A stretch of DNA of 64,000 bases from positions 1 to 64,000 of the forward strand of contig CDROCS010003444.1 in the NCBI GenBank assembly GCA_977020255.1. The letters run 5' to 3'. Every line of letters begins with the position of its first letter. Within the stretch, counting starts at the first letter, position 1. The notes beneath the pieces are model-generated. The model was not told the origin of the DNA and ran no database searches. It was given only the letters and a program-made list of their open reading frames with translations. Source of the DNA: Obrimoposthia wandeli (Eukaryota). The position numbers and the translations under genes are program-made. This document shows, piece after piece, positions 11,096 through 29,327 of the stretch.

Positions 11096-11145
11096 CAATT
11101 GCCGTATATCACCAAACTTCACTCCAGCTACCCATGTAAGGTAAA

Positions 11146-12165
11146 GGCTATTTTCCCGAAAGATAGTGCTATACTGATAATATGATCAGTATAGATAGGG
11201 GTTAATCATGATTACTGCAGAATTCAATAAGCTTTTAAGTGCGCTTACTCAATTAACAGACCTACAAACTAAGAGGCTAGAAAAAGCTTTAAAAAGTGAG
11301 AGTCCAGCTCAAATCATCATCAATATTTTAGAGAAAAGGCTGGTCTCGAATCCAGAATGCCCGCATTGCCATTCAGATCGAATAAAGCGTAATGGAAAGC
11401 TAAATACAATGCAGCGTTATAGATGTAGCACCTGCTCTAAAACATTCAATGCAACGACAAATACACCCTTAGCAAAACTTCATTATAAGGATAAATGGCT
11501 AACTTACTTTTCTTGCATGATTGAAGGCGATGTACTGAGAAAGTCCGCTCTCAAATGTAGCATAAATCTCAAAACATCTTTCAGATGGAGACATCGTCTT
11601 TTAGAGCTGCCTGCTCTTCTTAAGGCCACGTCTTTACAAGGAATTATAGAAATGGATGAAACCTTTTTTCCTTATTCTGAAAAAGGGAGCAGGAGTTTAA
11701 GTAGGCCTGCAAAGCAGCGTGGAGAGAAAGCAAAGAAACGAGGAAGATCCAAGCAAGATTGGGTTGCTGTTATGACTGCACGTGACAGGTCTAAGCATAC
11801 TTATGAAGCGGTATTATCTTCGGTTAGTTCTGCAGAGCTAAACCGAAACCTAAGCGGGAAAATAGAAAAAGACAGTGTGCTGTGTAGCGACGGTTTTAGG
11901 GCATATATTCAAGTAGCTTCGGTCAATAAAATGGAACATAAGCGACTAAATGTATCTGCTGGAATAAGAGTTATCGATAACGTTTTTCATATTCAAAACG
12001 TAAATGCCTATCACCAAAGACTGAAAAGTTGGATCAAGCGTTTTCATGGAGTAGCCACCAAATACCTTGAACACTATTTGGGCTGGTTTAGATTTTAGAC
12101 ACGACAGATAATCCTAATGAAAACAGTCTCTTCGAAGTGCAGCAACACTTAACGGGAACATAGCC
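11146..12165 (+). mobile_element. IS1595-family insertion sequence, 1020 bp, imperfect TIRs, 8-bp TSD AAGGTAAA
   Basis: IRL GGCTATTTTCCCGAAAG; IRR reverse complement GGCTATGTTCCCGTTAAG; AAGGTAAA at 11138-11145 and 12166-12173. Confidence 0.93.
11208..12098 (+). CDS. IS1595-family DDE transposase, probably C-terminally truncated by a frameshift
   Basis: Zn-ribbon CPHC...RYRCSTC, HTH, EMDETFF, SDG, HIQNVNAYHQRLKSWIKRFHGVATKYLEHYLGWF. Confidence 0.9.
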   Translation: MITAEFNKLLSALTQLTDLQTKRLEKALKSESPAQIIINILEKRLVSNPECPHCHSDRIKRNGKLNTMQRYRCSTCSKTFNATTNTPLAKLHYKDKWLTYFSCMIEGDVLRKSALKCSINLKTSFRWRHRLLELPALLKATSLQGIIEMDETFFPYSEKGSRSLSRPAKQRGEKAKKRGRSKQDWVAVMTARDRSKHTYEAVLSSVSSAELNRNLSGKIEKDSVLCSDGFRAYIQVASVNKMEHKRLNVSAGIRVIDNVFHIQNVNAYHQRLKSWIKRFHGVATKYLEHYLGWFRF

Positions 12166-12626
12166 AAGGTAAAAAGTATATATGCGAGGATTACTAGCTC
12201 AGGCCTCTAAAATAAAATTTTAAAATTTATTTTGAATTAAAATAAACCAAAATAATACGAAGGTAATGAGTTGGGGAAATACTCTATTTAACTGAAGAAA
12301 AAATAGTCTTGAGGCATGTGAATTCTTGATTTATCATCGTTGAAGATGACGCATGATTTACTTAGCTCGCCTCTAAAGCAGCTTTTTTAGTTCTTTTATC
12401 ACTCTCTTCTTATAAAAGTTCGCAGTTGTTTTTTAAACATTTCTGCAAATTCATCGCATTATATTATAGCAGTACCAGCACTTACCTTGAACTTCAATTT
12501 GTTGAACGATTTACGTTCGATAAGTGTTCTCATTAACATTTATTGATGTAATTATCCTGTACGCTTTTAGTTTTTAGATCCAAGCGCTATCTAGCGCTAT
12601 GTTGTTGACTTAAAAAGCACATTTCA

Positions 12627-12675
12627 TGTCGCTTAAATACTTTTGTGATGGCGCTTTGAAATAGCTCGGTGTCGC
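12627..12675 (+). promoter_or_regulatory. Candidate AraC/GlxA-type operator: TG(T/G)CGC x3 at 21-22-bp period upstream of mttB
   Basis: TGTCGC at 12627, TGGCGC at 12649, TGTCGC at 12670. Confidence 0.4.
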
Positions 12676-12781
12676 GCTTAGATCAGCCTGTAAGTGAATG
12701 TCTAACCATAATTGGCTCATTATCTAAGTAGTATTTATTATGATTCTTTCCACTACTTTCTATTCCATGGAGCAGTTTAAT

Positions 12782-14347
12782 ATGAGCGATACCCCAACTA
12801 ACGCACGTCGCGCACGTGGCGGCCGAGCAGGTCGTAAAGCAAAAGAAGCCATTGAGGTTAATCCAATTGTTCCGTATATCACTCGTAACATTCCCTTTTA
12901 TGAAGTGTTAGATGAGGATGGTTATAAAATCATCGAAGCGAATGCCGAAACTATTTTATCTGAAATCGGTATTGAGTTTAGAGACGACGAAGAGGCGTTA
13001 CAAATTTGGCGCGATGCCGGAGCTGACGTACAAGGTGAATTAGTAAAATTCCCTAAAGGTTTATGTCGCAAATTAATTCAAGACTCTGCCCCTAGAGAGT
13101 TTACACAGCATGCCCGCAATGCTGAGCGCAGTGTTGTTATTGGTGGTAAAAACACCGTATTCGTTCCCGCTTACGGAAGCCCATTTGTTTCAGATATGGA
13201 CAAAGGGAGACGCTACGCAACGATTGAAGATTTTCAAAATTTTGTAAAACTGGCCTATATGTCAGATAGCTTACATCACTCTGGCGGTACCATTTGCGAG
13301 CCGGTTGATTTACCAGTGAATAAGCGTCATTTCGATATGATTTATACTCATATGAAGTATTCAGATAAGCCTTTCATGGGGTCTGTAACAGCACCCGAAA
13401 GAGCACAAGACTCTGTTGATATGTGTAAGATATTGTTCGGTGATGATTATATTGATAGCGATACAGGCAAGCCTAAAACGTGCATGATTAGCTTGATTAA
13501 CGCCAACTCGCCAATGACCTTTGATGACACTATGCTAGGTGCTGCTAAAGTATACGCGCGCAACAACCAAGCCTGTATCGTCACACCGTTTATACTAGCA
13601 GGTGCTATGTCTCCTGTGACAGTTGCGGGTACTGCTGCGCAATCACTTGCTGAAGCAATGGCAGGCATGGCATTTGTTCAATTAGTTAATCCAGGTGCTC
13701 CTGTAGTGATGGGTAGTTTTGCGAGCTCCATTTCTATGCAATCAGGTGCTCCTACTTTCGGTACGCCCGAGCCTGCACTTGTGCTTTATATCATGGCGGC
13801 GTTAGCAAGACGCTTAGGAGTACCTTTCAGATCCGGTGGCGGCCTATGTGGTTCTAAACAACCTGATGCTCAAGCAGCGAGTGAAGCGGCTAATACTTTA
13901 ATTCCGGCTACTTTAGCCGGCGTTAACTTTGCATTACACACGGCTGGCTGGCAGGAAGGTGGCCTAGTAATGGGCTATGAAAAATTTGTGATGGATACGG
14001 ATTTAGCAGGCATGATGTGTACGAAGCTAAAAGGGGTTGATCTTTCGGAGAACGGCCAAGCTTTAGATGCGATTCGTGAAGTTGGCCCCGGTAATCACTT
14101 CCTCGGTTGCGCCCATACCCAAGCCAATTTTAAAAGTGCCTTTTATCGATCTCCTCTGGCTGATAATAATAGTTTTGAGCAATGGGAAGCTGATGGCAGT
14201 TTAAGTCAAGAGCAACGCGCAAACGCTCTTTGGAAAAAGATGCTGGCAAACTATGAAGCTCCGCCTATAGACCCTGAAACTGACGCAGCTCTTATTGCTT
14301 TCATGGATGCACGTAAAGCTGCATTCCCTGATTCTAATATTTCTTAA
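12782..14347 (+). CDS. Non-pyrrolysine MttB-superfamily methylamine/betaine:corrinoid methyltransferase (MtgB-like)
   Basis: PAYGSPFV, HHSGGTICEPVD, SDKPFMG, GAPTFGTPE, SKQPDAQA, VGPGNHFLG. No in-frame TAG. Start placed at ATG 12782 (track start 12740). Confidence 0.92.
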   Translation: MSDTPTNARRARGGRAGRKAKEAIEVNPIVPYITRNIPFYEVLDEDGYKIIEANAETILSEIGIEFRDDEEALQIWRDAGADVQGELVKFPKGLCRKLIQDSAPREFTQHARNAERSVVIGGKNTVFVPAYGSPFVSDMDKGRRYATIEDFQNFVKLAYMSDSLHHSGGTICEPVDLPVNKRHFDMIYTHMKYSDKPFMGSVTAPERAQDSVDMCKILFGDDYIDSDTGKPKTCMISLINANSPMTFDDTMLGAAKVYARNNQACIVTPFILAGAMSPVTVAGTAAQSLAEAMAGMAFVQLVNPGAPVVMGSFASSISMQSGAPTFGTPEPALVLYIMAALARRLGVPFRSGGGLCGSKQPDAQAASEAANTLIPATLAGVNFALHTAGWQEGGLVMGYEKFVMDTDLAGMMCTKLKGVDLSENGQALDAIREVGPGNHFLGCAHTQANFKSAFYRSPLADNNSFEQWEADGSLSQEQRANALWKKMLANYEAPPIDPETDAALIAFMDARKAAFPDSNIS

Positions 14348-14353
14348 TTTATC

Positions 14354-14386
14354 GCGACCTCGTACAACACGAGGTCGCTTTGTTTT
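14354..14386 (+). terminator. Intrinsic terminator after mttB
   Basis: GCGACCTCGT-ACAAC-ACGAGGTCGC followed by TTTGTTTT. Confidence 0.8.
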
Positions 14387-14681
14387 GCTATCTATTTATC
14401 TATGAAACCCATACACATTTTATTTGACTTACATTAATCTGAGTTCGCAGATTCACCATTACTTTGTGCCTAGTATTATCTTAAACTGCCTTTCGCTTAT
14501 TAATCTACGGTAAATTCGCACCTATCAACAAACTGATTTTTTCATCTTCTTTGTGCATATAATGCATAGGGTTTTTTAGAAATCGTGCTATTTTACAAGT
14601 TCTAGATCACTCTGATAAAAACTAAAAAAAACACTATAAATCCTTATCATATTAAGCTATATCAATAGCTTGAGATACGAC

Positions 14682-15668
14682 ATGACAATACAATCTACTA
14701 AATCACCAACACGTTACGGCTTTTTGCTAGTCGATAAATATTCAATGATTGCACTTAGTTCTGCAATTGAACCTTTGCGTATGGCAAACAGACTTTCTAA
14801 ACAAACCCTATATGAATGGCCTGTTTTTACGGTAGATGGACTACCTGTCCCCGCTAGCAACGGGTTAGTCGTTACGCCGGATAGCGCTGTCGATCAGATC
14901 GCTAACTTAGATATTTTATTTATTTGTGCAGGCGTTGATGTATCTGGGGTTTATACTAAAAAGCTGCACTCTACTTTATGCAAACTTGCACTGCAAAAAG
15001 TCAACTTAGGCGGCTTGTGTACGGGTACATATTTACTGGCTCGCGCCGGGTTACTCAATGGCTATAGATGTACTATCCACTGGGAGAATATGGCAAGCTT
15101 ACGTGAAGAGTACAATCAAGTCTCCGTTAGCGATGAGCTTTACGAGATTGACCGAGATCGCTACACCTGTGCCGGTGGCAGCGCCCCGTTAGATATGATG
15201 CTAAAACTCATTAGCGACTCAAATAGTGGTAAGCTTTCTGCCAATATTTCTGAGCAATTTGTTTGCGATAGAATTCGTGGCCGCCACGATAGACAGCGTA
15301 CACCGCTACAACAGCATTTAGGGGCTAGCCAGCCCAAATTAATTGAGGCAATTACCTTAATGGAAGCCAATATTGAGGAGCCGATGAGTATTGACGAACT
15401 GGCCAGCTTAGTAGGTGTCTCTAGAAGACAATTAGAGCGACTATTCCAAAAGTATTTGAGTTGTGTTCCAACAAGATATTATATGGACTTACGTTTGAAT
15501 TGTGCCCGCAGATTATTGCTACAAACCAGCAAATCTGTCATTGATGTATCACTTGCATGTGGTTTTGTTTCCCCGCCACATTTCAGCAAATGCTATCGGG
15601 ATTATTTTGGCATCCCACCTCGAAATGAACGCCAACAAAAACTATCCAATATGGATATAGAGTATTGA
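14682..15668 (+). CDS. GlxA/GbdR-family AraC regulator (DJ-1 domain + HTH)
   Basis: IEPLRMANRLS, GGLCTGTYLLARAGLL, TIHWEN, TCAGG, VSRRQLERLFQKY, SHFSK-like FVSPPHFSKCYR. Confidence 0.9.
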   Translation: MTIQSTKSPTRYGFLLVDKYSMIALSSAIEPLRMANRLSKQTLYEWPVFTVDGLPVPASNGLVVTPDSAVDQIANLDILFICAGVDVSGVYTKKLHSTLCKLALQKVNLGGLCTGTYLLARAGLLNGYRCTIHWENMASLREEYNQVSVSDELYEIDRDRYTCAGGSAPLDMMLKLISDSNSGKLSANISEQFVCDRIRGRHDRQRTPLQQHLGASQPKLIEAITLMEANIEEPMSIDELASLVGVSRRQLERLFQKYLSCVPTRYYMDLRLNCARRLLLQTSKSVIDVSLACGFVSPPHFSKCYRDYFGIPPRNERQQKLSNMDIEY

Positions 15669-15670
15669 TA

Positions 15671-15711
15671 AGTAATAAAAAAGGCGCTAATAAGGCGCCT
15701 TTTTTATTACT
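15671..15711. terminator. Bidirectional intrinsic terminator between convergent genes
   Basis: AGTAATAAAAAAGGCGC-TAATAAG-GCGCCTTTTTTATTACT, a perfect inverted repeat. Confidence 0.85.
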
Positions 15712-15734
15712 CAATACACTCTTAGTATTTCTAC

Positions 15735-17795
15735 TTATGAACTTCTCGATCTCCTTCGGCTCGTGGTACGCCCACCTCGAGGTGCACTACTCACTTCTTT
15801 CCTTGCGGGTAATTGCACCACTTTAGACAGATTAACAAAATCATCTGTCAAATGCGGTAAAGCCATTGCCGCTACAAAGTGATCTTGAAACTTTGCCTCG
15901 GTTGCTGTTTCAATCTTTTCAACTTTATCAATAATATTGGAGATCAGCGTTCGTTTTTCGCGATTCAACAATGCAATACGCGCACCCGTTCCGGCTGCAT
16001 TACCCACCGGGGCCACAAGCGGTAAATCGCAGTCGGGAATAAGCCCTAACACCATCGCATACTTAACATCAATATGACTGCCAAACGCACCCGCCAAGCC
16101 AATACGCCCTACTGTCGCCACTTGCATATGATCCATTAGCAATCGAATGCCTGCATATAGCGCTGCTTTTGCCAGCTGAATAGCACGCACATCATTTTGA
16201 GTGATAGACAGTGTTTTTTCACTTTCATGCAAAACGTAAGTAAAAGTACGGCCATCTGCGACTATTCGCTGACTTTTCTCGGCCATCGCGCCATCAATCA
16301 CACCATCACTATTAATAACGCCGGCTAAAAACAATTCAGCGACTATTTCAATAATACCTGAACCACAAATACCGCTAATCTGCAGCTTCTTAGTTTTCTC
16401 GGAAAAATCTTCATCGTTAGACCAAAGGTCACAGCCAATCACTTTGAATTTAGGTTCAAGGGTGTCTTTATCGATGCGTACACGCTCAACGGCACCTACT
16501 GCTGCGCGTTGGCCACAGCTAATTTGTGCGCCTTCAAATGCCGGCCCTGTTGGGCTAGATGCGGCTAATAAGCGCTCTTTGTTACCTAATACAATTTCGG
16601 CATTGGTGCCAATATCCACCAGCAAAGTGACTTCGTCAGCTTGATCAGGGCGCTCTGCTAAAATCATTCCTGCTGTATCAGCCCCTATATGCCCTGCTAT
16701 ACAAGGTAAAATAAATGCTTTAGCGCTTGGGTGCAGTGCTACATCTAACTGACTCGCTTTTAATGTAATCGCCATATCGGTGGCTAGCGCAAAAGGCGCG
16801 GTGCCCAGTGGCGTCGGGTCAATGCCTAACAATAAATGGTGCATGATAGGGTTGCACACGATGGTCATGTCGATGATATCGGCAATGTCTATTTTGGCTT
16901 TTTTGGCCGCTTCTTTAGCTAATTGATTAAACGCTTGGCGCACCGCGTTAGTCATTTCGACTTCGCCGCCATCATTCATCATCACATAAGAGACACGGCT
17001 CATTAAATCTTCGCCGAATCTTATTTGCGGGTTCATGGCAGCACAAGTTGCTAATACTTTGCCGCTACTAAGCTCGCACAAATGTGCCGCTATTGTGGTT
17101 GAGCCTAAATCGATGGCTAAACCGTATAGGCCAAGTTTAATGCCTGGCCATACTGCAATTATTTCTGCACTGCTCTTTATGTTGCGCTCAGGGCTGCTTG
17201 TGCTGACATCATTATCGTAATAAAGCGCTAGCGTAATCTCGCGACCCGCTTTTGCTAGAGCTGGTTGTAACTGCTGCATTACCGATAGCTCGCAACGACT
17301 ACTGTCTAGGTTATGTTGTTTTAACAACATATCTTGCACTCTCTGAAGATCAGAGGCTGGTTCATCAATGTTTGGCTCATCAACAGTGAAGGTAAACAAT
17401 TTTACATTCGGATCTATCACTAGCTCTAAGGCCGTCGCCTCTTTAACAATGTGCTGTTTATGTAGCTGACTACTCGCCGGAACATCGACAACTAAATCAC
17501 CTAAAATTTGCACATTACAGCTCAGGCGCTTACCCGTGCTTAAGTCTAATTTTCGATTGGTATGCTCAAGTTCACTCGGCACTGACATATTCTCTAATTT
17601 AGAGACAATGCCGTGTTTAGGAAACTCACCGATACTAGGCATAACCTGGCAGCGAGTACATATACCTCGCCCGCCACAGCTTGATTCAAGATCAACCCCT
17701 AATAGCTGCGCAGCTTGTAGCACTGGAGTACCCAATGCAAACTCACCGCGCAAACCACTAGGTGTAAATACTACTGTTGCTTTTTGTGTCATCAT
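15735..17795 (-). CDS. [2Fe-2S]-ASKHA reductive activator of corrinoid enzymes (RACE/RamA-like)
   Basis: CGGRGICTRC and RLSC ferredoxin motifs, IDLGSTT, GEDLMSRV, VDIGTNAEI, GPAFEG, GICGSG, GAFGS, GNAAG. Confidence 0.92.
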   Translation of the reverse strand: MMTQKATVVFTPSGLRGEFALGTPVLQAAQLLGVDLESSCGGRGICTRCQVMPSIGEFPKHGIVSKLENMSVPSELEHTNRKLDLSTGKRLSCNVQILGDLVVDVPASSQLHKQHIVKEATALELVIDPNVKLFTFTVDEPNIDEPASDLQRVQDMLLKQHNLDSSRCELSVMQQLQPALAKAGREITLALYYDNDVSTSSPERNIKSSAEIIAVWPGIKLGLYGLAIDLGSTTIAAHLCELSSGKVLATCAAMNPQIRFGEDLMSRVSYVMMNDGGEVEMTNAVRQAFNQLAKEAAKKAKIDIADIIDMTIVCNPIMHHLLLGIDPTPLGTAPFALATDMAITLKASQLDVALHPSAKAFILPCIAGHIGADTAGMILAERPDQADEVTLLVDIGTNAEIVLGNKERLLAASSPTGPAFEGAQISCGQRAAVGAVERVRIDKDTLEPKFKVIGCDLWSNDEDFSEKTKKLQISGICGSGIIEIVAELFLAGVINSDGVIDGAMAEKSQRIVADGRTFTYVLHESEKTLSITQNDVRAIQLAKAALYAGIRLLMDHMQVATVGRIGLAGAFGSHIDVKYAMVLGLIPDCDLPLVAPVGNAAGTGARIALLNREKRTLISNIIDKVEKIETATEAKFQDHFVAAMALPHLTDDFVNLSKVVQLPARKEVSSAPRGGRTTSRRRSRSS

Positions 17796-17803
17796 TAAAT
17801 CCG

Positions 17804-17893
17804 CTGAATAAGGTTATGAAAGATATCTAATATTATTATTGGCTACCTTTTACGGCACCCTCTGAATAAGGTTATGAAAGATATCTAATATTA
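17804..17893. repeat. Perfect 32-bp direct repeat x2 (17804-17835, 17862-17893) with a 26-bp spacer
   Basis: CTGAATAAGGTTATGAAAGATATCTAATATTA occurs twice; the second copy overlaps the stop codon of the upstream gene. Confidence 0.9.
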
Positions 17894-18787
17894 GGCGCGA
17901 CGTCTGCGCCCACTTCTACCGTTTCTACCTTCGCCTTCCGCTGTTGGCTCACGAAAACGTTTGATCCAATTAGCACAATCTGGATCTCGACCCATCATCA
18001 CATCAGCACCTAGTGTTGCTGCTATTACTTCTGTATGTAATGGATTGGTGATTGCAGAAGTCATACCCGCTGCTATTGCCATACTTAAAAATGCAGCATT
18101 AAAGCCATCTCTGTTAGGTATACCAAAACTGATGTTAGAAGCACCACAAGTGGTATTGACTTTAAGCTCAGTGCGCAAGCGATGTACTAATTTCATCACT
18201 TGAATACCTGAATCATTGATCGCGCCTATAGGCATAACTAAAGGATCAACAACTACATCGCACGCTGGAATACCATAATCTGCTGCGCGCTCTACTATTT
18301 TTTTAGCCACTTCAAAACGCACATTTGGATCTTGTGAGATACCCGTTTCATCGTTTGAAATGGCAACGACTGCAGCACCGTACTTTTTAACTAGTGGTAG
18401 TACGCGCTCCATTTGCTCATCTTCGCCGGTCACTGAATTAACAAGTGCTTTACCTTTATAAACGGACAAACCCACTTCTAAAGCTTCTACAATTGACGAG
18501 TCAATACATAAAGGAATATCGGTAAATGACTGAATAAGCTGAATAACTTCACCCAGTATTCTAGGCTCATCGGCCAGTGGAATACCTGCGTTAACATCGA
18601 GTATGTGTGCACCTGCAGCGATTTGTGCCAGCGCATCCGCTTTAACTCGGCTGTAATCACCTTCTTTCATTTCAGCGGCAAGTAGCTTACGACCCGTCGG
18701 GTTAATGCGCTCGCCAATAATTACAAACGGGCGCTCAAAACCAATCACAGCTTCTTTAGTGGCTGAACTTAAAATTGTATCTGTCAT
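17891..18787 (-). CDS. Pterin-binding methyl-THF:corrinoid methyltransferase (MeTr/MetH folate domain)
   Basis: IIGERINPTGRK, LDVNAG, PLCIDSS, VNSVTGE, VVDPLV, GASNISFGIPNR. Confidence 0.9.
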   Translation of the reverse strand: MTDTILSSATKEAVIGFERPFVIIGERINPTGRKLLAAEMKEGDYSRVKADALAQIAAGAHILDVNAGIPLADEPRILGEVIQLIQSFTDIPLCIDSSIVEALEVGLSVYKGKALVNSVTGEDEQMERVLPLVKKYGAAVVAISNDETGISQDPNVRFEVAKKIVERAADYGIPACDVVVDPLVMPIGAINDSGIQVMKLVHRLRTELKVNTTCGASNISFGIPNRDGFNAAFLSMAIAAGMTSAITNPLHTEVIAATLGADVMMGRDPDCANWIKRFREPTAEGEGRNGRSGRRRRA

Positions 18788-19803
18788 TTTGCTGTACTCT
18801 CTGTCAACAGTTGCTCATCGCGTCCCGGGTACCACGGGGTTCTTCCCTGTAGTACACCCGAGCGTTTAATTATGTCACCTACCGCATCTTCTTGGCGGTA
18901 TGCCATGACGTGTATGCCACTAACTCCTTCAATTTCACTGAGTTCTTGAATCAGCTCAACACAAAGCTCTTGGCTTTCTTTCTTTTGATCTTTAGCACCT
19001 GCTAAGCGTGCAATGACCGAATCCGGGATATGTATACCGGGCACATTATTGCGTATCCATGTAGCCGTTTTTGCGGATGCCATCGGCCCAACACCTGGCA
19101 ATACAAATACCTTTTCTAACAAACCTAAATCTCTCGACTTTGCCATAAACTCTTTAAAACGCGGCACATCAAAACAATAATTGGTTTGCACAAACTGTGC
19201 CCCCGCAGCTATTTTTTTAGCTAAGCGGTAAGGTCTAAAATCATGTGGTGGTGCAAAAGGGTTGGATGCTGCACCTAAAAAAACTGTAGGTGGATCAGTG
19301 ATTTTACGGCCGCTTAAAAACTGACCTTTATCGCGCATGCCTCTTATCGTTTCTAAAAGTGACATACAATCTAAATCAAATACAGGTTTGGCTTGTGGGT
19401 GATCGCCCGCCTGCACCCCATCTCCTGTTAGGCACAACATGTTAGTAACACCCATCGCTGCACCACCTAGCACATCACCTTGAATAGCAATGCGGTTTTT
19501 GTCACGACAAGAGATTTGCATAATAGGTGCATAACCAACACGGGTTAACAATGCACACATACTCACGCTTGACATATGACAGTTAGCGCCAGAGCCATCT
19601 GTGGCATTCATGCCGTCAACAAACCCATCGAACACACGAGCTCTGTCATATACATCTTGTGGGTTTGCTGAATCAGGTGGTGCGAGCTCGGATGTCACAG
19701 CAAAGTGACCGGCACGCAACACACGCTCTAATCTTCCAGCTGATGTATGCCCTTCTAATATAGGTAGCTTTTCGCCTGGGATAGGCTCATCCGTAAATAT
19801 CAT
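18784..19803 (-). CDS. metF: Methylenetetrahydrofolate reductase
   Basis: TSELAPP, NATDGS, QISCRDKNR, LCLTGD, KKIAAGAQFVQT, GIHVM. Confidence 0.88.
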   Translation of the reverse strand: MIFTDEPIPGEKLPILEGHTSAGRLERVLRAGHFAVTSELAPPDSANPQDVYDRARVFDGFVDGMNATDGSGANCHMSSVSMCALLTRVGYAPIMQISCRDKNRIAIQGDVLGGAAMGVTNMLCLTGDGVQAGDHPQAKPVFDLDCMSLLETIRGMRDKGQFLSGRKITDPPTVFLGAASNPFAPPHDFRPYRLAKKIAAGAQFVQTNYCFDVPRFKEFMAKSRDLGLLEKVFVLPGVGPMASAKTATWIRNNVPGIHIPDSVIARLAGAKDQKKESQELCVELIQELSEIEGVSGIHVMAYRQEDAVGDIIKRSGVLQGRTPWYPGRDEQLLTESTAK

Positions 19804-20282
19804 TTTTGTTTAGGCTCTTGTTGTGTAGGCTCATATTGCTGAACTATTTCGTTTATTTTACGCAACCAAGAAGAACTACCTTGCTGTGAGTGATCAACAG
19901 GGATTTGCACGATATTAATACGATCGCCTGAATTCATACTTTGGCTACCTCGCCAAGCCTCCATCCATACACAACGCATTTCAGGCTTTACTTCACAATG
20001 GCCATTTTGACGCACACCGCCACAAGGCCCGTTACGCAAATTTTTTGGGCAGTTCATAGAACATGACATACCCGTTGAGCTTAACGCGCACTGCCCACAC
20101 ATTTTGCAATCGAATAATAAGCCTTTACACCATTGCTCTACTTTTGCGACAGGCTTTTCTAAACGCTCGAAGCCAATTTTAGCTAATAGCGGATGTATTT
20201 TAATTAACACTTTTTCAAACGTGTTGTACAAGCATTCAAAAATATTTGAATGTGTAACCGCCCACTGACGCACCTTTAACAT
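19800..20282 (-). CDS. MetV-like / MTHFR C-terminal Cys-rich protein
   Basis: CKMCGQC, CSMNCPK, NGPCGG, CEV, CVW; stop overlaps the metF start. Confidence 0.8.
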   Translation of the reverse strand: MLKVRQWAVTHSNIFECLYNTFEKVLIKIHPLLAKIGFERLEKPVAKVEQWCKGLLFDCKMCGQCALSSTGMSCSMNCPKNLRNGPCGGVRQNGHCEVKPEMRCVWMEAWRGSQSMNSGDRINIVQIPVDHSQQGSSSWLRKINEIVQQYEPTQQEPKQK

Positions 20283-20468
20283 TTATATCTCCAACCCAGT
20301 TCTTTGTCACTAGTATCTTAGAGAAGATGTTAAAAAGCGGCGGCCACTTTTTAGTAGTCACCCGTTTATATATCATGTTCAGCTAAGATAATTCTGCGTT
20401 CTAGTCTCGATGCTTTCATGCTTCCTACTTTGTGCTAAGTAAAAGGCTTAAGACGTACTTAAGGAAAG

Positions 20469-21176
20469 CTATACAAGCTGAACGGCTATTTTATTATTAA
20501 ATTCGGCCAAAGGTCTCGATAGTCCGTTGGTGCCGGTATATTGGTACTCATATTCAAGATTTAAACGCCTAGCTGCAATCATCGCAGCAGCTTGAAGCTT
20601 TTCATCTTCACACTGTGACAAATACATCAACTTTCGATAGTTGCCAAAGTATAAAGATAATAATTCTGGCTTTTGATCAATGCCTAAACCACGAATGATT
20701 AAACGTTCAAAATGTCGTACTAGAAAATCAGTTAAATAAAAGGTACCCAATTCGGCTTCTTGCAATTGCTCAAACTGCTCGCTACCTGCGTAGAATTCAT
20801 AGCAATGTGCCCCCGCAATTCGTTCTACCTGCTCTTCTTCAATCAAGGTATCGAGCAACCCTCCAGTACCACAATCGGCAAACGCTACAAAGATCTGCTG
20901 CTGCTTTGCCTTTGCAATATCAATTAGCACTTTTACTTCTCCCGTAATGCGTTGAGGATAGTTATGTACTTCAGCGCTAATACACTGGACATCAAGGTGC
21001 ATCCAATTATTGGCTTTACATACGCTTAAGATATCGCGCATTAAAGCAGAACAACAAATGATAACGGCGCTCGCATTTTCATTTTTGGTAGATGAGTTAA
21101 CTACAGCTGATGATTTAATTACTTTAGTTTGCGTAGCGGCTATTGATTCAAGCCTTTTAGCTCTTCCTCTACGCAT
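20469..21176 (-). CDS. DUF1638 domain protein (corrinoid reactivation-associated)
   Basis: AEVHNYPQRI, ADCGTGG, AHCYEFYAG, GTFYLTDFL, YFGNYRKLMYL. Confidence 0.8.
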   Translation of the reverse strand: MRRGRAKRLESIAATQTKVIKSSAVVNSSTKNENASAVIICCSALMRDILSVCKANNWMHLDVQCISAEVHNYPQRITGEVKVLIDIAKAKQQQIFVAFADCGTGGLLDTLIEEEQVERIAGAHCYEFYAGSEQFEQLQEAELGTFYLTDFLVRHFERLIIRGLGIDQKPELLSLYFGNYRKLMYLSQCEDEKLQAAAMIAARRLNLEYEYQYTGTNGLSRPLAEFNNKIAVQLV

Positions 21177-21256
21177 TTAAATCACCTGCAGTTTTTTGCA
21201 ATTACAATATTTTCACAATTGTGATAACCAATTTTCAACCGCTACTCGGCTAATAC

Positions 21257-21955
21257 TTAAGCTGCTCGCTTTTGCTTTATCATCTCTAATGCCATATCAA
21301 CTGCAATGGCTGCATCACGACAATAACCATCAGCGCCTACTGCATCACCAAATTCTTGGTTAAGTGGTGCTCCGCCTACTAATACAATGTAATCATCACG
21401 AATACCTTGCTCTTTCATGGTATCGATCACAACTTTCATATAAGGCATGGTAGTGGTTAGCAGTGCAGACATACCTAATATATCCGGCTTGTGCTCTTCT
21501 AAGGCTTCTAAGTACTTTTCAACGGGAATATTAATACCTAGATCGATCACTTCAAGTCCAGCGCCCTCCATCATCATGCCTACCAAGTTTTTACCGATGT
21601 CATGAATATCGCCTTTAACGGTTCCGATCACCATTTTTCCGACTGATTCAACACCTGTTTCAGCCAGTAATGGCCGTAGGATAGCCATGCCGCCTTTCAT
21701 TGCGCCCGCTGCGCTGAGCACTTCAGGTACGAATAAAATTCCATCACGAAAATCAACACCGACAATTGCCATTCCTCCAACGAGAGCATCATTTAACACT
21801 CTATCAGGCGCCCAACCGCGCGCTAGCAATATGTTAGTGCCCTCAGAAACTTCTTCTGCCATACCGTCGTAGAGATCGTCGTGCATCTGCTCTACAAGTT
21901 CGTCATCATTCAGGGTTGATAAATCTAGTTCATCATCAAAATTTTCTTCAGACAT
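21257..21955 (-). CDS. Stand-alone corrinoid (B12-binding) protein
   Basis: Cap domain ILFVPEVL plus GTVKGDIHDIGKNLV (DxHxxG) and SALLTTTM, VLVGGAPL. Confidence 0.93.
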   Translation of the reverse strand: MSEENFDDELDLSTLNDDELVEQMHDDLYDGMAEEVSEGTNILLARGWAPDRVLNDALVGGMAIVGVDFRDGILFVPEVLSAAGAMKGGMAILRPLLAETGVESVGKMVIGTVKGDIHDIGKNLVGMMMEGAGLEVIDLGINIPVEKYLEALEEHKPDILGMSALLTTTMPYMKVVIDTMKEQGIRDDYIVLVGGAPLNQEFGDAVGADGYCRDAAIAVDMALEMIKQKRAA

Positions 21956-22156: not shown

Positions 22157-22183
22157 GCGACGAGAAGATACTAGAAAGCGACA
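22157..22183 (-). promoter_or_regulatory. Candidate operator: (T/C)GTCGC x2 at 21-bp spacing upstream of the corrinoid operon
   Basis: GCGACG at 22157 and GCGACA at 22178; same motif and period as upstream of mttB. Confidence 0.4.
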
Positions 22184-22493: not shown

Positions 22494-23594
22494 TTACGCT
22501 GCGCTAGTTAACATACGAATTTTACTATCTACCTCACCATGATCGATATAGTACCCGCGCAGATGCCTGTCACCAGTGGTGGGATCAAAAGCTGAGCGCC
22601 CATGTAACACACGCCCATTGTCAAATATCATCATCTCCCCAGCCTGTAACTTTAACTGCAAAGCGTATTGAGGGGAGCGAATACGACGCATTAAATCTTG
22701 ATACGCACGGTAAAAGTCGATATTTTGACCATCAATTAAGTTTGCGCTTTCAGCCAGATGGGCATTGAAAATAAAATTATTAATCACGCCATTCTCTTCA
22801 CTAATCGATGCATGCTTATAACGAATATCACAATTGCTATCATGAAACCTAAACGGCATTTTCTGTTGACATAAACGTAGGTAATTATCTGAATTTTGAC
22901 TACGTAGGTCTTCAGCAATCGCAAAACCATCTGCCAATAATGACTCTCCGCCTTGCGCATCATTTTTAATGCAGTGCAAAAATTGATACCCAGGTGGTAA
23001 TTGCTGGTTGGTAAGATCAGTGTGCAAAGGCAGTTCTACTGCGGTATATGCTAAATTGTTTGGATCCGCTTTATTAATAACTTCAAACATAACCCCAAAG
23101 TTCGTTTCACGTTTAAAGCCAATCAAATCACCAAATTGCTCACCGCTGAGCTCTCCTTGCAATTCATTAATAATAACTAAACCATCACGCTTCAAAGCAC
23201 TTAACATCTCTTTAAGTTGCGCCGGATTTTCTTCATCAAATTTATTAGCACTAAAGCGCTGTATATCAAAATCACCTTCCCAACGAGCATAGCTTATTTC
23301 TGCTGGATCTTGCAGCTGACAACCCACAGCATAGCTAGCTAATAGTTTAGCGGAAAATACTGAGCGCTCAATTTCACCTGGCCACTGCAAAGATATATGC
23401 TCTTTTGTATACTCTATATCCGTTGGAATAATTTCAATTGACACTTTTGTTAGATCAAATAAGCGCTCTGCAGTTTGCGGATGGAACCCTAAAGGATCGA
23501 TATCACGCAACCAAATAAATGGGAATTTAGATTGGCTGCTATCAGCCCAAGTGAGATCAATTGTAGCGTTGGTAACATTTATAGCTTTTATCAT
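22494..23594 (-). CDS. Gamma-butyrobetaine hydroxylase-like Fe(II)/2-oxoglutarate dioxygenase (TauD family)
   Basis: N-terminal WLRD segment, NNLAYT, LHTDL (HxD), QFLHC, SLLADGF, FDNGRVLHGR, RHLRGYY. Confidence 0.85.
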   Translation of the reverse strand: MIKAINVTNATIDLTWADSSQSKFPFIWLRDIDPLGFHPQTAERLFDLTKVSIEIIPTDIEYTKEHISLQWPGEIERSVFSAKLLASYAVGCQLQDPAEISYARWEGDFDIQRFSANKFDEENPAQLKEMLSALKRDGLVIINELQGELSGEQFGDLIGFKRETNFGVMFEVINKADPNNLAYTAVELPLHTDLTNQQLPPGYQFLHCIKNDAQGGESLLADGFAIAEDLRSQNSDNYLRLCQQKMPFRFHDSNCDIRYKHASISEENGVINNFIFNAHLAESANLIDGQNIDFYRAYQDLMRRIRSPQYALQLKLQAGEMMIFDNGRVLHGRSAFDPTTGDRHLRGYYIDHGEVDSKIRMLTSAA

Positions 23595-26308: not shown

Positions 26309-29281
26309 ATGGTTTCTATACAACAACTAAATACAGCACGTAATACAGCAATCGCCGCAACTAGCACCGGTGCTCCCAAGGCGACCTCTAACCAGTTTTT
26401 TGGTGTCGGCCCCATCACTGATATGACTCTAAACGAGGTAGACGCTAGATTATTGCGTTTTGAATTTGATGCTTGGATAGAAGCTAACTACCCAAAACTT
26501 GATGATCAAGGCAATAAAATTGGTCAATTTACCACTGCTGAAATTGGCCGTGGTATGCACCGTGGCTATCCTGCTGATAAAGTATTAAATGACATGATGC
26601 GTGAAATGCACCGTTATTTTGCTTTTCCTAAAAGCAATAAAATGGCGGTGGGCTTGGGCGGTGGGCACAGTGGTTTTACCGCCGCAGCCCTGCATATGAT
26701 GAATGCAAATAACAGTGAACAGATTGTATTTGTTGATACACCTAAGCCTGAATCTGAAGCAGCTAAAGCCGGAGGCTTCTTTCGCCAATCTTGGGGAACG
26801 CAATTAACTGAATTACAACGCTATGCAACTAACGGTGATGAAAGCCGCTTAATCTTTGCAGAAGGCGAAGGCGCTATTCCAAGTGCTGATTTTTTAGTAT
26901 CTAAAGGTGTTAAATTATTCTTTGGTGTAGGCCATGAAACAACAGGGGCTACCACTTACACAAGCGAGGAAATAACTAACTTATTAGCTTGGATTGATTT
27001 AAACCCCGGCGAACACCATGCAGTAATTGATGCAACTTCCTTATTAGGCGCGATGCCTTGGCCACAAACGCTGGTTGAGCAGATGCTGGCTAAGTGCACC
27101 ATGTTTATGCCTTTCCAAAAGGCTATTGGCGGTATTTCAGGCTACTACGTCATTTCTTTAACACCCCAAGCGCTTAACTTAATTGATGAAAACCAAAAAG
27201 ATCCTTCATGGGCTATCCCTAGGCAATTAAAAATTGCTGTATCTGTTGATGGCACTTTACCGCTAAGCTCAGCAAAAAGTACTGCACTGGGGCCAATTTA
27301 CGACCCTCAAACAGATAAAATGCTCGGTGGTATCATCAACACTTACAGCACTTTGGCGTTTGCAGAAACAACTTTTGGTATTTTACGTAATGAAAGAAAC
27401 ATTGGTGATGTAACCACGCTTAACGAACGCTCAAGCACTAACCGCAATATCGTCAATACATGGGTTGCTAACAATCCACTATTTGAGCTAGGCGTTGCTA
27501 ATGAAGATGCACGTGGTGCTGCTGTTACGTTATTAAAGGTAACTGATAGCGACATTACTGATGATGCTGTTCACCAGCGCATCGTAGCTAAATCTAAGCA
27601 GTTACTAGGTTATGATGGTATTACTCATGCTGATGGCTGCCACGAAAAAGGCCTAGATGTAGCACGTTATGTTAATGCTTTCCCAGGCTCTCCCGGTGAT
27701 TATCGCGCATGGATTGGTGGTATTCGCCCACAAGTTGATATTACATCCCTTCTGGATAATGTTAACTACTGCTACTTGCGCGCAAAAATTGCCGTGCTAG
27801 AAGAGCTATTAACCGATGCTGGTGAAAGTTTTGACAGCGCTGTTAATACCACTAGTACTGATGAAGCTCGCGTGGATGATTCACAACGTGCTTATAAAGT
27901 ATTGATCGCAGATTTAGTCGGCATGGTCTTTGATGTAAATGGCGAAGCCGATTGCTCTAGCGTTAAGCAACATGTTGAAAGCAAAGGCGGTGTTTTTCAC
28001 AATCAAGCCCTCAACGATGACGCAAAACTAGCTGCTGGCATGCATTTCTTTTATCAACCGCACTTAAGCCGTGAAGATGAGTTGTTAGCACAAACTGAGC
28101 AAGGACAATACGATGCAACCATCGTAGCTGCTACCTTCTTGCCTAAAACGGCTAAGTTTGAATTTGGCGGTGTACGCATTGGTGCTGGCACTGGCAACAT
28201 GGGCGCAGATAGCTGGGGCGGAGGTAACGGCACTGGCGGTATTGCACCTTTAATGAATACACCTAGTTTTAATTCAAGAGCGACTGCACAAACCGCTTTT
28301 AAAGCATTACTTAAAGTACTACCCGATTTACAAGTACAAGCAATGCACGATTTAGTGGTTGCTGGTGATTTCGATACAGGCAAAAATCTTGCACAATTCC
28401 CGACCACTAAACTTGAGGGCAAGAAGATAGCCATCATTGGTTTTGGCAATATTGGTCGTGAAGTGGCTAAATTAGCCGCAGCATTTGGCATGCGCGTCAG
28501 TGTTTATGCTAGAGCAAAACACCAGGTTTGGATTGAATCTGAAGGCTTTGAATATGCATCTTCTATCGTTGCAGCTGCTAAAGATGCCGATGTTATTAGC
28601 CCGCACACTGGCCTTGGCGCATTAGATGCTACAACGGGTATTTTCAGCAATGCTAATATCATCAATAGTGAAGTTTTCTCTGCAATGAACCAAGCTGCAA
28701 TACTGGTTAACTATGATCGCGGTGAAGTGGTTGATATAAACGCTTTAGATGCAGCGCTAAGCAGCGGCCAAATTCGTTACGCAGCGATTGATGCCGATTT
28801 GTTTAAAGATCCGACGAGCGGTGAATTATCAGGCCCTATGGTTCCTTACCGTAATATTGAGCCTAAGCACGTTGGAAAAATGGAGTTATTACCCCATGCA
28901 GCGGCCGATACTGAGCATATGTCTCGTGTTGAAGGCGCTAAGCAAGCGGTTGATCAGATTTTCGATGTTATCCAATATCGCAAGGTAACTAACCTTAAAG
29001 GTGATTTACCTGCAGGTTATGAAGATGATGGTGCTAAAACAGTTAATGGTGTTGGTAAAGTCAATGCTGCTAACTTACAGGGTTTAGATGATGCACAGCT
29101 TCAACAACTAAGCGAAAGCGCACAATATGTGGCTGCTTTTTGGGGAGCGGTTAACGCAACTCAAGATCCGCAACGTAAAGCGCAATTAATTGCTCAATAT
29201 AGTGAACAGCTAGTGCTTCAATCTAATATTTATGCAACGCTTATGCAAAAGAATGGCCTGCAAGGTCCTTTAGCTGAATAA
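26309..29281 (+). CDS. Fusion of a class-V PLP aminotransferase (SerC-like) and a D-2-hydroxyacid dehydrogenase
   Basis: N-terminal half: GLGGGHSGF, VIDATSLLG, MPFQKAIGG (PLP Lys), GDYRAW. C-terminal half: IIGFGNIGREVA, VNYDRGEVVD, LLPHAAA. Single uninterrupted ORF. Confidence 0.85.
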   Translation: MVSIQQLNTARNTAIAATSTGAPKATSNQFFGVGPITDMTLNEVDARLLRFEFDAWIEANYPKLDDQGNKIGQFTTAEIGRGMHRGYPADKVLNDMMREMHRYFAFPKSNKMAVGLGGGHSGFTAAALHMMNANNSEQIVFVDTPKPESEAAKAGGFFRQSWGTQLTELQRYATNGDESRLIFAEGEGAIPSADFLVSKGVKLFFGVGHETTGATTYTSEEITNLLAWIDLNPGEHHAVIDATSLLGAMPWPQTLVEQMLAKCTMFMPFQKAIGGISGYYVISLTPQALNLIDENQKDPSWAIPRQLKIAVSVDGTLPLSSAKSTALGPIYDPQTDKMLGGIINTYSTLAFAETTFGILRNERNIGDVTTLNERSSTNRNIVNTWVANNPLFELGVANEDARGAAVTLLKVTDSDITDDAVHQRIVAKSKQLLGYDGITHADGCHEKGLDVARYVNAFPGSPGDYRAWIGGIRPQVDITSLLDNVNYCYLRAKIAVLEELLTDAGESFDSAVNTTSTDEARVDDSQRAYKVLIADLVGMVFDVNGEADCSSVKQHVESKGGVFHNQALNDDAKLAAGMHFFYQPHLSREDELLAQTEQGQYDATIVAATFLPKTAKFEFGGVRIGAGTGNMGADSWGGGNGTGGIAPLMNTPSFNSRATAQTAFKALLKVLPDLQVQAMHDLVVAGDFDTGKNLAQFPTTKLEGKKIAIIGFGNIGREVAKLAAAFGMRVSVYARAKHQVWIESEGFEYASSIVAAAKDADVISPHTGLGALDATTGIFSNANIINSEVFSAMNQAAILVNYDRGEVVDINALDAALSSGQIRYAAIDADLFKDPTSGELSGPMVPYRNIEPKHVGKMELLPHAAADTEHMSRVEGAKQAVDQIFDVIQYRKVTNLKGDLPAGYEDDGAKTVNGVGKVNAANLQGLDDAQLQQLSESAQYVAAFWGAVNATQDPQRKAQLIAQYSEQLVLQSNIYATLMQKNGLQGPLAE

Positions 29282-29327
29282 CTAACGACATAATTATTCA
29301 ACTATTTTACTATTCAAGGAATACAGC

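What the first reader, a model, noticed from the sequence alone, without database searches (positions are those of the whole stretch)
12782..21955. Near-complete B12-dependent betaine-to-folate methyl-transfer module in an apparent gammaproteobacterium
Seen: non-Pyl MttB (Leu at the apparent Pyl position, GLCGSK), a corrinoid protein, a pterin-binding methyltransferase, a RACE activase, DUF1638, MetF, a MetV-like protein and a GbdR-like regulator, all co-located. Established: MttB-family MtgB/MtcB/MtyB/MtpB enzymes demethylate quaternary amines onto corrinoids in anaerobes, and split-MetH parts with RamA and DUF1638 are known in roseobacters. Inference: methyl flows from a betaine to the corrinoid, to THF, then to methylene-THF. 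No homocysteine methyltransferase domain is in the window, which favours C1 harvesting over methionine synthesis.
Basis: partly seen in the sequence, partly recalled or inferred. Interest (0 to 1): 0.78.

Follow-up and report, generated by a model that had tools for sequence, protein, structure and literature searches.

The report
Cobalamin-dependent glycine betaine demethylation gene cluster
This is a marine gammaproteobacterium's copy of the vitamin-B12-dependent system that strips a methyl group from glycine betaine and passes it to folate, a system described in aerobic marine bacteria in 2025 and common in related species, so it is a correct but ordinary finding.

Summary
They are a non-pyrrolysine MttB (Leu at the Pyl position), a GbdR-like regulator, a RACo/RamA-type activase, a pterin-binding methyltransferase, MetF, MetV, DUF1638 and an MtgC-type corrinoid protein.

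The interpretation also holds. The cluster matches, gene for gene (46-76% identity), the Sinorhizobium meliloti cluster that Mausz et al. (PNAS 2025) assign to the MtgBCD glycine betaine demethylase of aerobic bacteria.

The cluster is not rare. The same synteny occurs in dozens of Gamma- and Betaproteobacteria, and about 5% of sampled species of the class carry the MttB orthologue. An Oceanospirillaceae MAG shares the gene order from the mttB module through the glycerate-kinase and AhpC genes (window about 12.7-32.6 kb).

- A GbdR/CdhR-type direct-repeat operator lies upstream of both mttB and mtgC and is conserved across genera.
- Three of the four glycine-betaine-binding residues of Desulfitobacterium MtgB are invariant.
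- MttB, MeTr and RACo carry conserved Arg-rich tails, and MtgC has an acidic N-terminus.
- A clade-specific TauD-family (butyrobetaine-hydroxylase-like) gene sits next to mtgC.

The missing homocysteine methyltransferase is weak evidence, because that gene is usually unlinked. Verdict: new member of a known kind, low interest. The scan read this same stretch twice more; no report on other DNA was found.

The parts
12626..12675 (+). Predicted operator upstream of mttB. It has three direct half-sites, TGTCGC-N16-TGGCGC-N15-TGTCGC, 107-156 nt before the 12782 start.
   Evidence: Only 3 relaxed dyads occur in the 64-kb window, all in the two promoters, against 0.53 expected. The architecture matches the P. 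aeruginosa CdhR/GbdR sites, GGTCGC with a 15-bp spacer (PMC5806209).
12782..14347 (+). mttB/mtgB: a non-pyrrolysine MttB-superfamily methyltransferase (MT1). It is predicted to methylate Co(I)-MtgC with glycine betaine. The ORF opens at 12740, and the N-terminus is Arg-rich.
   Evidence: PF06253 761 bits. PDB 4YYC E 1e-228, D. hafniense MtgB 2QNE/9YCE E 1e-132, Pyl-MttB 7XCL E 2e-38. Leu369 sits at the Pyl position. Y145, R364, H400 and W404 are invariant in 120 orthologues.
14354..14378 (+). Terminator-like hairpin (10 pairs, 7 of them G-C, followed by a T tail) directly after mttB, which suggests mttB is monocistronic.
14670..15668 (+). GbdR-like AraC-family activator with a GATase1/DJ-1 sensor domain and two HTH motifs.
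   Evidence: NF052371 GbdR 463 bits (cut-off 480), PF01965 plus PF12833. It lies adjacent to the MttB orthologue in 36 of 80 related loci.
15735..17795 (-). RACo/RamA-type ATP-dependent reductive activase of the corrinoid protein. It has an N-terminal 2Fe-2S ferredoxin domain, an ASKHA domain and an Arg-rich C-terminal tail.
   Evidence: PF17650, PF17651 and PF14574; AcsV model 371 bits. Cys40/46/49/93. The tail is conserved.
17891..18787 (-). Pterin-binding methyltransferase (MT2, called MtgD or MeTr), acting as methyl-Co(III)-MtgC:THF methyltransferase. It has an Arg-rich C-terminal tail.
   Evidence: PF00809; PRK07535 360 bits against a cut-off of 259. It is 61% identical to the S. meliloti cluster gene.
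18784..19803 (-). MetF-type methylene-THF reductase (MetF2), predicted to run in the oxidative direction from methyl-THF to methylene-THF.
   Evidence: PF02219. It is 75% identical to the S. meliloti cluster gene.
19800..20282 (-). MetV-like Cys-rich partner of MetF (DUF5981). Its coding sequence overlaps metF by 4 nt.
   Evidence: PF12225 87 bits. It has 10 Cys residues. It is 62% identical to the S. meliloti 'MTHFR C-terminal domain' protein.
20469..21176 (-). DUF1638 protein. Its biochemical role is unknown. Genetic evidence in Phaeobacter links it to upkeep of the corrinoid protein.
   Evidence: PF07796. It is the only copy in the 1.35-Gb assembly. Fitness data are in PMC5764234.
21257..21955 (-). 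MtgC-type corrinoid protein with a cap domain and a Rossmann B12 domain. It carries the His-on motif DIHDIG and a strongly acidic N-terminus.
   Evidence: PF02607 plus PF02310. Motif and 76% identity to the S. meliloti protein. Net charge is -16 over the first 40 residues.
22157..22182 (-). Predicted operator upstream of the mtgC operon. Read towards mtgC it is GTCGC-N16-GTCGC, about 200-230 nt before the start codon.
   Evidence: The block is conserved in L110 and L089. The strict dyad is present upstream of mtgC in 22 of 34 related loci, against 0.009 expected per 350 nt.
22494..23594 (-). TauD-family Fe/2-oxoglutarate dioxygenase, about equally related to TmpA and gamma-butyrobetaine hydroxylase. 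It is a neighbour specific to this clade, probably its own transcript, and its link to the module is uncertain.
   Evidence: PF02668 plus PF06155. It scores below the cut-offs of both the BBOX and TmpA NCBIfam models. PDB 6NPB E 4e-38 and 4BG1 E 1e-34. It is conserved beside mtgC in L110 and L089-91 and beside a BCCT transporter in L111. A hairpin lies at 22396-22374.

Best explanation
The cluster is a GbdR-regulated, cobalamin-dependent quaternary-amine demethylation module of the MtgBCD type found in aerobic Proteobacteria. Its substrate is most likely glycine betaine.

**Proposed steps**
- MttB/MtgB transfers one N-methyl group of glycine betaine to the Co(I) form of the corrinoid protein MtgC, leaving dimethylglycine.
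- The pterin-binding methyltransferase moves the methyl group from methyl-Co(III) to tetrahydrofolate.
- MetF, with its Cys-rich partner MetV, oxidises methyl-THF to methylene-THF for C1 oxidation or serine formation.
- When the cofactor falls to Co(II), the RACo/RamA-type activase re-reduces it using ATP and its 2Fe-2S domain. DUF1638 assists in an unknown way.
- The GbdR-like activator binds direct repeats upstream of mttB and of the mtgC-DUF1638-metV-metF-mtgD-ramA operon and switches both on.

**Basis of each claim**
- Shown here: gene content, orthology and synteny, active-site and cofactor motifs, and the shared cis-element.
- Inferred from published genetics in roseobacters: the direction of methyl flow and the dependence on B12.
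- Inferred only: the substrate, the electron acceptor of MetFV, and regulator binding.
For: **Domains and system membership**
- Seven structural genes have orthologues, in the same order, in the S. meliloti cluster (46-76% identity). PMC12478193 names that cluster as MtgBCDE with the reactivation modules.
- mtgC and mtgD knock-outs in R. pomeroyi abolish growth on and consumption of glycine betaine, and MetF2, RamA and DUF1638 are induced.
- A P. inhibens mtgB1 gbcAB double mutant cannot grow on glycine betaine.

**Substrate**
- The window MttB is far closer to D. hafniense MtgB (E 1e-132) than to Pyl-MttB (E 2e-38).
- It keeps Tyr97, Arg312 and His348 of the glycine betaine site. These are invariant in 120 orthologues, and three distant paralogues in the assembly lack them.
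- A dimethylglycine-dehydrogenase-like gene lies within 10 kb of the MttB orthologue in 15 of 80 related loci, and FolD in 8 of 80.

**Regulation**
- GbdR/CdhR-type dyads occur only in the two promoters of the window.
- They are strongly enriched upstream of mtgC in other genera.

**Catabolic rather than biosynthetic role**
- Four of the five related genomes checked (Amphritea, Motiliproteus, Halomonas, Halioglobus) also have full-length MetH.
Against: - The fourth glycine-betaine-binding residue of D. hafniense MtgB (Phe356) aligns with an invariant Gly408. Trp404 may replace it, but this was not tested structurally.
- Orthology to the genetically validated P. inhibens MtgB1, or to R. pomeroyi SPO2108/SPO2134, could not be tested because those sequences were out of reach.
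- No betaine transporter and no dimethylglycine or sarcosine enzyme was found on the 184-kb contig with the queries available.
- The regulator scores just below NCBI's GbdR cut-off.
- The corrinoid protein scores below both MtgC model cut-offs.
- No experiment exists for this organism.
Confidence: 0.78

Rival explanations
1. The machinery is the same, but the physiological methyl donor is another quaternary amine, such as proline betaine, carnitine, gamma-butyrobetaine, a hydroxylated derivative made by the neighbouring TauD-family dioxygenase, or another marine betaine.
For: - Phe356 of the MtgB site is not conserved.
- MttB-superfamily members with other betaine substrates keep Arg312 and often His348.
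- A butyrobetaine-hydroxylase/TmpA-like gene is conserved beside mtgC in this clade and lies beside a BCCT transporter elsewhere.
Against: - The paper on the MtgB site states that other specificities do not conserve the aromatic pair, yet Tyr97 is kept here along with Arg and His.
- The orthologue sits in the S. meliloti cluster next to bmt and a glycine betaine/proline ABC transporter.
- The regulator is closest to GbdR.
- Dimethylglycine-dehydrogenase-like genes are frequent neighbours.
- The TauD-family gene is absent from 80 other loci and has its own terminator-like hairpin.
Confidence: 0.17
2. The main role is anabolic. MtgC, MeTr, the activase and DUF1638 form a split methionine synthase together with an unlinked homocysteine-binding MtgE, and MetF supplies the methyl-THF.
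For: [quoted passage not shown]
- mtgE is usually unlinked in marine Gammaproteobacteria.
- Stand-alone 355-366-aa PF02574 genes exist in the mixed assembly and in the relatives.
Against: - The cluster includes a betaine-type MT1 and a GbdR-like regulator whose operator sits on both promoters.
- Four of the five related genomes checked carry full-length MetH.
- No PF02574 domain lies on the 184-kb contig.
- A secondary dual role is not excluded.
Confidence: 0.05

Closest known systems
MtgBCD(E)/RamA/DUF1638/MetF2 system of aerobic marine and soil Proteobacteria (Ruegeria pomeroyi, Phaeobacter inhibens, Sinorhizobium meliloti; PMC12478193, PMC5764234, bioRxiv 10.64898/2025.12.19.695462)
   Same: All components are present and are orthologous to the S. 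meliloti cluster at 46-76% identity, in the same order. The system was already reported in Gammaproteobacteria.
   Different: - All catabolic parts are compacted into two divergent-convergent units, whereas they are scattered in the roseobacters.
- No mtgE lies nearby.
- A GbdR-like regulator with a recognisable operator is present, and those papers do not discuss one.
- A TauD-family gene occupies the position where the closest other genera have FolD.
Desulfitobacterium hafniense MtgB/MtgC/MtgA glycine betaine:THF methyltransferase (PDB 2QNE, 9YCE; PMC13080624)
   Same: It uses the same three-component chemistry. MT1 matches at E 1e-132, Leu sits at the Pyl position, and Tyr97, Arg312 and His348 are kept.
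   Different: - Phe356 is replaced: Gly408 aligns with it, and an invariant Trp404 lies nearby.
- The window protein has a roughly 45-residue Arg-rich N-terminal extension that the D. hafniense enzyme lacks.
- The corrinoid protein scores below both NCBIfam MtgC cut-offs.
- The host is aerobic.
Pyrrolysine-dependent trimethylamine methyltransferase MttB of methanogens (PDB 7XCL)
   Same: It shares the TIM-barrel family (PF06253) and has a cognate corrinoid protein and an activase.
   Different: There is no pyrrolysine: Leu369 sits at that position. Similarity is weak (E 2e-38), and the protein scores 260 bits against a cut-off of 525 for TIGR02369.
Pseudomonas aeruginosa GbdR/CdhR/SouR regulators of betaine catabolism
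   Same: The domain architecture is the same. The predicted site uses direct repeats with a GTCGC core at 21-22-bp periodicity.
   Different: In Pseudomonas, GbdR drives the oxygenase route (GbcAB). Here the predicted regulon is the cobalamin route. The protein scores 463 bits against a cut-off of 480.

Membership tests
MtgBCD-type cobalamin-dependent glycine betaine demethylase system (aerobic Proteobacteria) | MttB-superfamily MT1 without pyrrolysine | tested here: met
   PF06253 761 bits. Leu369 aligns with the Pyl of 7XCL, and there is no in-frame stop.
MtgBCD-type cobalamin-dependent glycine betaine demethylase system (aerobic Proteobacteria) | Stand-alone corrinoid protein with a cap domain, a Rossmann B12 domain and the DxHxxG motif | tested here: met
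   PF02607 plus PF02310. DIHDIG is at residue 116, and the protein is 76% identical to the S. meliloti cluster protein.
MtgBCD-type cobalamin-dependent glycine betaine demethylase system (aerobic Proteobacteria) | Pterin-binding MT2 (MtgD), a RamA/RACo-like activase, DUF1638 and a second MetF | tested here: met
   Each has an orthologue in the S. meliloti cluster.
MtgBCD-type cobalamin-dependent glycine betaine demethylase system (aerobic Proteobacteria) | Glycine-betaine-binding residues of MtgB (Y97, R312, H348, F356; PMC13080624) | tested here: inconclusive
   Y145, R364 and H400 are kept. F356 aligns with G408, and W404 is invariant nearby.
MtgBCD-type cobalamin-dependent glycine betaine demethylase system (aerobic Proteobacteria) | Orthology to a genetically validated MtgB (P. 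inhibens MtgB1 PGA1_RS07270; R. pomeroyi SPO2108/SPO2134) | not tested
   The sequences were not obtainable with the tools. Only orthology to the S. meliloti cluster gene was shown (68% identity).
MtgBCD-type cobalamin-dependent glycine betaine demethylase system (aerobic Proteobacteria) | Glycine-betaine-dependent, B12-dependent methyl transfer to THF, and induction by glycine betaine | not testable with these tools
   This needs an enzyme assay, growth tests or RNA-seq.
Split methionine synthase MtgCDE | Homocysteine-binding subunit (PF02574, MtgE) belonging to the same organism | tested here: inconclusive
   None lies on the 184-kb contig. The assembly is a mixture of organisms, and the candidate contigs could not be fetched.
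Pyrrolysine-type trimethylamine methyltransferase (TIGR02369) | In-frame UAG/pyrrolysine and a score above the equivalog cut-off | tested here: not met
   260 bits against a cut-off of 525. Leu sits at the Pyl position.
NCBIfam MtgC (NF047996 / NF047995; anaerobe and methanogen type) | A score above the model cut-off | tested here: not met
   205 bits against 370, and 173 bits against 310. This agrees with the separate lineage described in PMC12478193.
GbdR (NF052371) | A score above the cut-off, and a direct-repeat operator of the GGTCGC-N15 type | tested here: inconclusive
   463 bits against 480. An operator of matching architecture lies in both promoters. Binding was not tested.
MetFV-type methylene-THF reductase | A MetF (PF02219) with an adjacent Cys-rich MetV (PF12225) | tested here: met
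   The two genes overlap by 4 nt. MetV has ten Cys residues.

The most novel reading that the evidence does not exclude
The Arg-rich tails on MttB (N-terminus), MeTr (C-terminus) and the activase (C-terminus), together with the strongly acidic N-terminus of MtgC, may form an electrostatic docking code. Such a code would let one corrinoid protein be time-shared between several partners: up to four MttB paralogues, MeTr, the activase and possibly an unlinked MtgE. The tails are conserved in all 18 proteobacterial loci examined, and D. hafniense MtgB lacks the N-terminal extension that carries the tail in MttB. In this Oceanospirillaceae clade the hub would also be fed by a new TauD-family hydroxylase acting on an imported betaine.
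Probability: 0.2. Interest if true: 0.55.

Novelty: new member of a known kind. Interest (0 to 1): 0.25.

Why it matters
The cluster adds one more marine gammaproteobacterium, of the Oceanospirillaceae type and recovered in a mixed assembly, to the organisms that spend vitamin B12 on glycine betaine catabolism. This fits the 2025 proposal that the route is a major sink for betaine and for cobalamin in the sea.

Three details may be useful:
- The conserved GbdR-type operator is a testable handle on how the cobalamin route is regulated.
- The invariant Tyr/Arg/His/Trp pocket could be used to sort glycine-betaine-type MttB proteins from their many paralogues.
- The conserved charged tails point to a testable docking mechanism.

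None of these changes the known picture of the pathway.

Tried and rejected
- **Exact-sequence look-up of the window MttB.** It is not on record.
- **Linking other contigs to this organism through the IS1595 copy.** No identical copy exists elsewhere; the best match is 82% identical.
- **Tetranucleotide comparison.** It suggests that the three other MttB-bearing contigs could belong to the same organism (r 0.92-0.94 to the window), but it cannot prove this. Lineages that are clearly different organisms (the Osedax symbiont Rs1 and the TARA metagenome loci) already reach r 0.89-0.90, and the assembly holds other marine Gammaproteobacteria such as Moritella.
- **Fetching MetH-, MetE- and MtgE-bearing contigs to compare composition.** Whether this bacterium has MetH or MtgE therefore stays open.
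- **Rfam scan.** No cobalamin riboswitch or any other RNA family was found in the window, and there are no tRNAs.
- **Literature search for PDB 4YYC.** Nothing was found.
- **Operator dyad upstream of the TauD-family gene or the aminotransferase-reductase fusion.** No dyad is present. A single half-site lies 70 nt before the fusion gene and is conserved in L110. It was not counted as evidence.
- **Osedax symbiont Rs1.** Its MttB orthologue (86% identity) stands alone beside a defence island, so that genome gave no information on context.
- **Jobs not sent.** Structure prediction, complex prediction and the large profile search were not run. A related solved structure exists (4YYC, E 1e-228), and partner binding follows from family knowledge.


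Full report
**What is there**

| Gene | Coordinates | Strand | Basis |
|---|---|---|---|
| mttB | 12740-14347 | + | PF06253, 761 bits |
| GbdR-like AraC regulator | 14670-15668 | + | DJ-1/PfpI plus HTH; 463 bits against a cut-off of 480 for NCBIfam GbdR |
| RACo/AcsV-type activase | 15735-17795 | - | PF17650, PF17651, PF14574 |
| Pterin-binding methyltransferase | 17891-18787 | - | PRK07535, 360 bits against a cut-off of 259 |
| MetF | 18784-19803 | - | PF02219 |
| MetV-like | 19800-20282 | - | DUF5981 |
| DUF1638 | 20469-21176 | - | PF07796 |
| Corrinoid protein | 21257-21955 | - | B12-binding_2 plus B12-binding |

- A strong hairpin follows mttB at 14354-14378.
- The six minus-strand genes are tightly spaced or overlapping and look like one operon.
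- The corrinoid protein has the His-on motif DIHDIG.
- The activase has a Cys40/46/49/93 ferredoxin motif.
- MetV has ten cysteines.
- Leu369, in GLCGSK, aligns with the pyrrolysine of Methanosarcina MttB 7XCL.

**Where it comes from**

- The 'genome' is a 1.35-Gb mixed assembly that holds many bacteria, with at least 15 MetH genes.
- The window is the first 64 kb of a 184-kb bacterial contig with about 40% G+C.
- The nearest relative is an Oceanospirillaceae MAG (GCA_036960485.1, locus L110). It shares the gene order AhpC, glycerate kinase, 990-aa fusion, ABC-F, TauD, mtgC, DUF1638, metV, metF, MeTr, RACo, gbdR, mttB.
- Other close MttB orthologues come from an Osedax symbiont, Aliamphritea, Amphritea and Motiliproteus.
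- 'Apparent gammaproteobacterium' is therefore correct.

**Is it known?**

Yes.
- Mausz et al. (PMC12478193) showed that in Ruegeria pomeroyi MtgC and the pterin-binding MtgD are needed both for glycine betaine demethylation and for methionine synthesis. MttB-family proteins, MetF2, RamA and DUF1638 are induced on glycine betaine. The genes occur in Alpha-, Delta- and Gammaproteobacteria, often clustered, and mtgE is usually elsewhere.
- A 2025 preprint shows that a P. inhibens mtgB1 gbcAB double mutant cannot grow on glycine betaine.
- Price et al. found the RamA-like and DUF1638 genes through fitness data.
- The window genes have orthologues at 46-76% identity, in the same order, in the S. 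meliloti cluster. That cluster also holds bmt (= MtgE) and a glycine betaine/proline ABC transporter.
- PDB 4YYC, a 'putative trimethylamine methyltransferase', matches the window MttB at E 1e-228.

**How common is it?**

The best 80 are 70-83% identical and are almost all Gamma- or Betaproteobacteria.
- Of those 80 loci, 31-44 carry each other component within 10 kb in the same order.
- In 300 genomes drawn evenly from the class of the Amphritea MAG, 16 have an orthologue at 64% identity or more.

**Substrate**

- The window MttB matches D. hafniense MtgB at E 1e-132 but Pyl-MttB only at E 2e-38.
- Of the four residues that bind glycine betaine in MtgB (Y97, R312, H348, F356; PMC13080624), Y145, R364 and H400 are kept and are invariant in 120 orthologues.
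- F356 aligns with an invariant Gly408. An invariant Trp404 lies four residues upstream and may supply the second cation-pi contact.
- Three distant MttB paralogues elsewhere in the assembly lack the Tyr and the Arg.
- Dimethylglycine-dehydrogenase-like genes lie within 10 kb of the MttB orthologue in 15 of 80 related loci, and FolD in 8 of 80.
- I put glycine betaine at roughly two in three, with another betaine as the main alternative.

**Regulation (new here)**

- Both promoters carry direct repeats with a GTCGC core at 21-22-bp periodicity. Upstream of mttB (12626-12675) the site reads TGTCGC-N16-TGGCGC-N15-TGTCGC. Upstream of mtgC (22157-22182) it reads GTCGC-N16-GTCGC.
- A relaxed dyad pattern finds only these three hits in the whole window, against 0.53 expected.
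- The mtgC block is a phylogenetic footprint shared with L110 and L089.
- The strict dyad lies upstream of mtgC in 22 of 34 related loci, against 0.009 expected per 350 nt. A relaxed form lies upstream of mttB in 22 of 83 loci, against 0.046 expected.
- The architecture equals that of the P. aeruginosa CdhR, GbdR, SouR and ArgR sites, which are GGTCGC half-sites with a 15-bp spacer (PMC5806209).
- Mausz et al. mention no regulator.

**Catabolic or anabolic?**

- No PF02574 domain lies on the contig. This is weak evidence, because mtgE is usually unlinked.
- More telling, Amphritea, Motiliproteus, Halomonas and Halioglobus genomes that carry the cluster also have full-length MetH.
- A secondary role in methionine synthesis cannot be excluded.

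**Neighbours**

- A TauD-family dioxygenase (22494-23594) scores below the cut-offs of both the butyrobetaine-dioxygenase and TmpA models. It matches the TmpA and BBOX structures about equally.
- That gene is kept beside mtgC in L110 (85% identity) and in TARA contigs (63%). It sits beside a BCCT transporter in another lineage, and beside a 2-hydroxyacid dehydrogenase and glycerate kinase in a third.
- It is absent from the 80 other loci and has its own terminator-like hairpin. In Amphritea and Motiliproteus, FolD occupies that position.
- It probably hydroxylates an imported trimethylammonium compound. A link to the module is possible but not shown.

**Verdict**

This is a new member of a known system, and interest is low.

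Noticed in passing
window 12782-12930 (MttB N-terminus), 17891-17960 (MeTr C-terminus), 15735-15800 (RACo C-terminus), 21840-21955 (MtgC N-terminus): MttB, MeTr and the activase carry Arg-rich tails, and MtgC has a very acidic N-terminus (net charge -16 over 40 residues). Both features are conserved in all 18 orthologous loci examined, from Oceanospirillales to Steroidobacteraceae and an alphaproteobacterium. The basic tail of DUF1638 is confined to the closest clade. D. hafniense MtgB lacks the N-terminal extension.
   Followed up: partly
window 22494-23594 (-): A TauD-family dioxygenase about equally related to TmpA and gamma-butyrobetaine hydroxylase, scoring below both NCBIfam cut-offs. 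It is conserved beside mtgC only in this clade, beside a BCCT transporter in L111, and beside 2-Hacid_dh plus glycerate kinase in L113. Its substrate is unknown.
   Followed up: partly
L089, L090, L091 (TARA and other marine metagenome contigs): In a sister lineage (MttB 88% identical) the cluster has lost metF and metV between MeTr and DUF1638, leaving only a 71-aa ORF there. The TauD-family gene is kept.
   Followed up: no
G000 contigs C6212:25780-27336, C6364:15448-17004, C4396:63143-64684: Three further MttB-family genes are 26-27% identical to the window protein. Two lie between a PrpD/MmgE-like gene and a GbdR-like regulator. One lies next to a dimethylglycine-dehydrogenase-like gene and a LysR regulator. 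Their composition resembles the window (G+C 0.41-0.43, tetranucleotide r 0.92-0.94), but the same organism is not proven. The whole assembly holds only one DUF1638 gene and, apart from the window's mtgC, only one other stand-alone MtgC-like gene; that one lies on C6047, whose composition is unlike the window (G+C 0.35, r 0.29).
   Followed up: partly
window 11144-12165 (transposase ORF 11208-12098, +): An IS1595-family element lies about 460 bp upstream of the mttB operator. The only other copy in the assembly is 82% identical, on contig C2866.
   Followed up: partly
window 26309-30485 (+) and L110, L113: The 990-aa aminotransferase/2-hydroxyacid-reductase fusion and the glycerate kinase keep their place near the TauD-family gene in L110. 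An unfused 475-aa reductase plus glycerate kinase does so in L113. A route from serine to glycerate next to a betaine demethylation module would suit assimilation of glycine plus C1 units. Only a single operator half-site lies 70 nt before the fusion gene.
   Followed up: partly
G000 as a whole: The assembly behaves like a metagenome or holobiont. It has at least 15 MetH-type genes, several MetE genes and many Mb-sized bacterial contigs. 'Own genome' searches therefore say nothing about the gene content of this one bacterium.
   Followed up: partly
G004 (Granulosicoccus MAG) C1:3416118-3422582: In this relative no full-length MetH was found, and a stand-alone 357-aa PF02574 gene lies about 4 kb from the MttB orthologue. 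This would fit the dual MtgBCDE arrangement.
   Followed up: no
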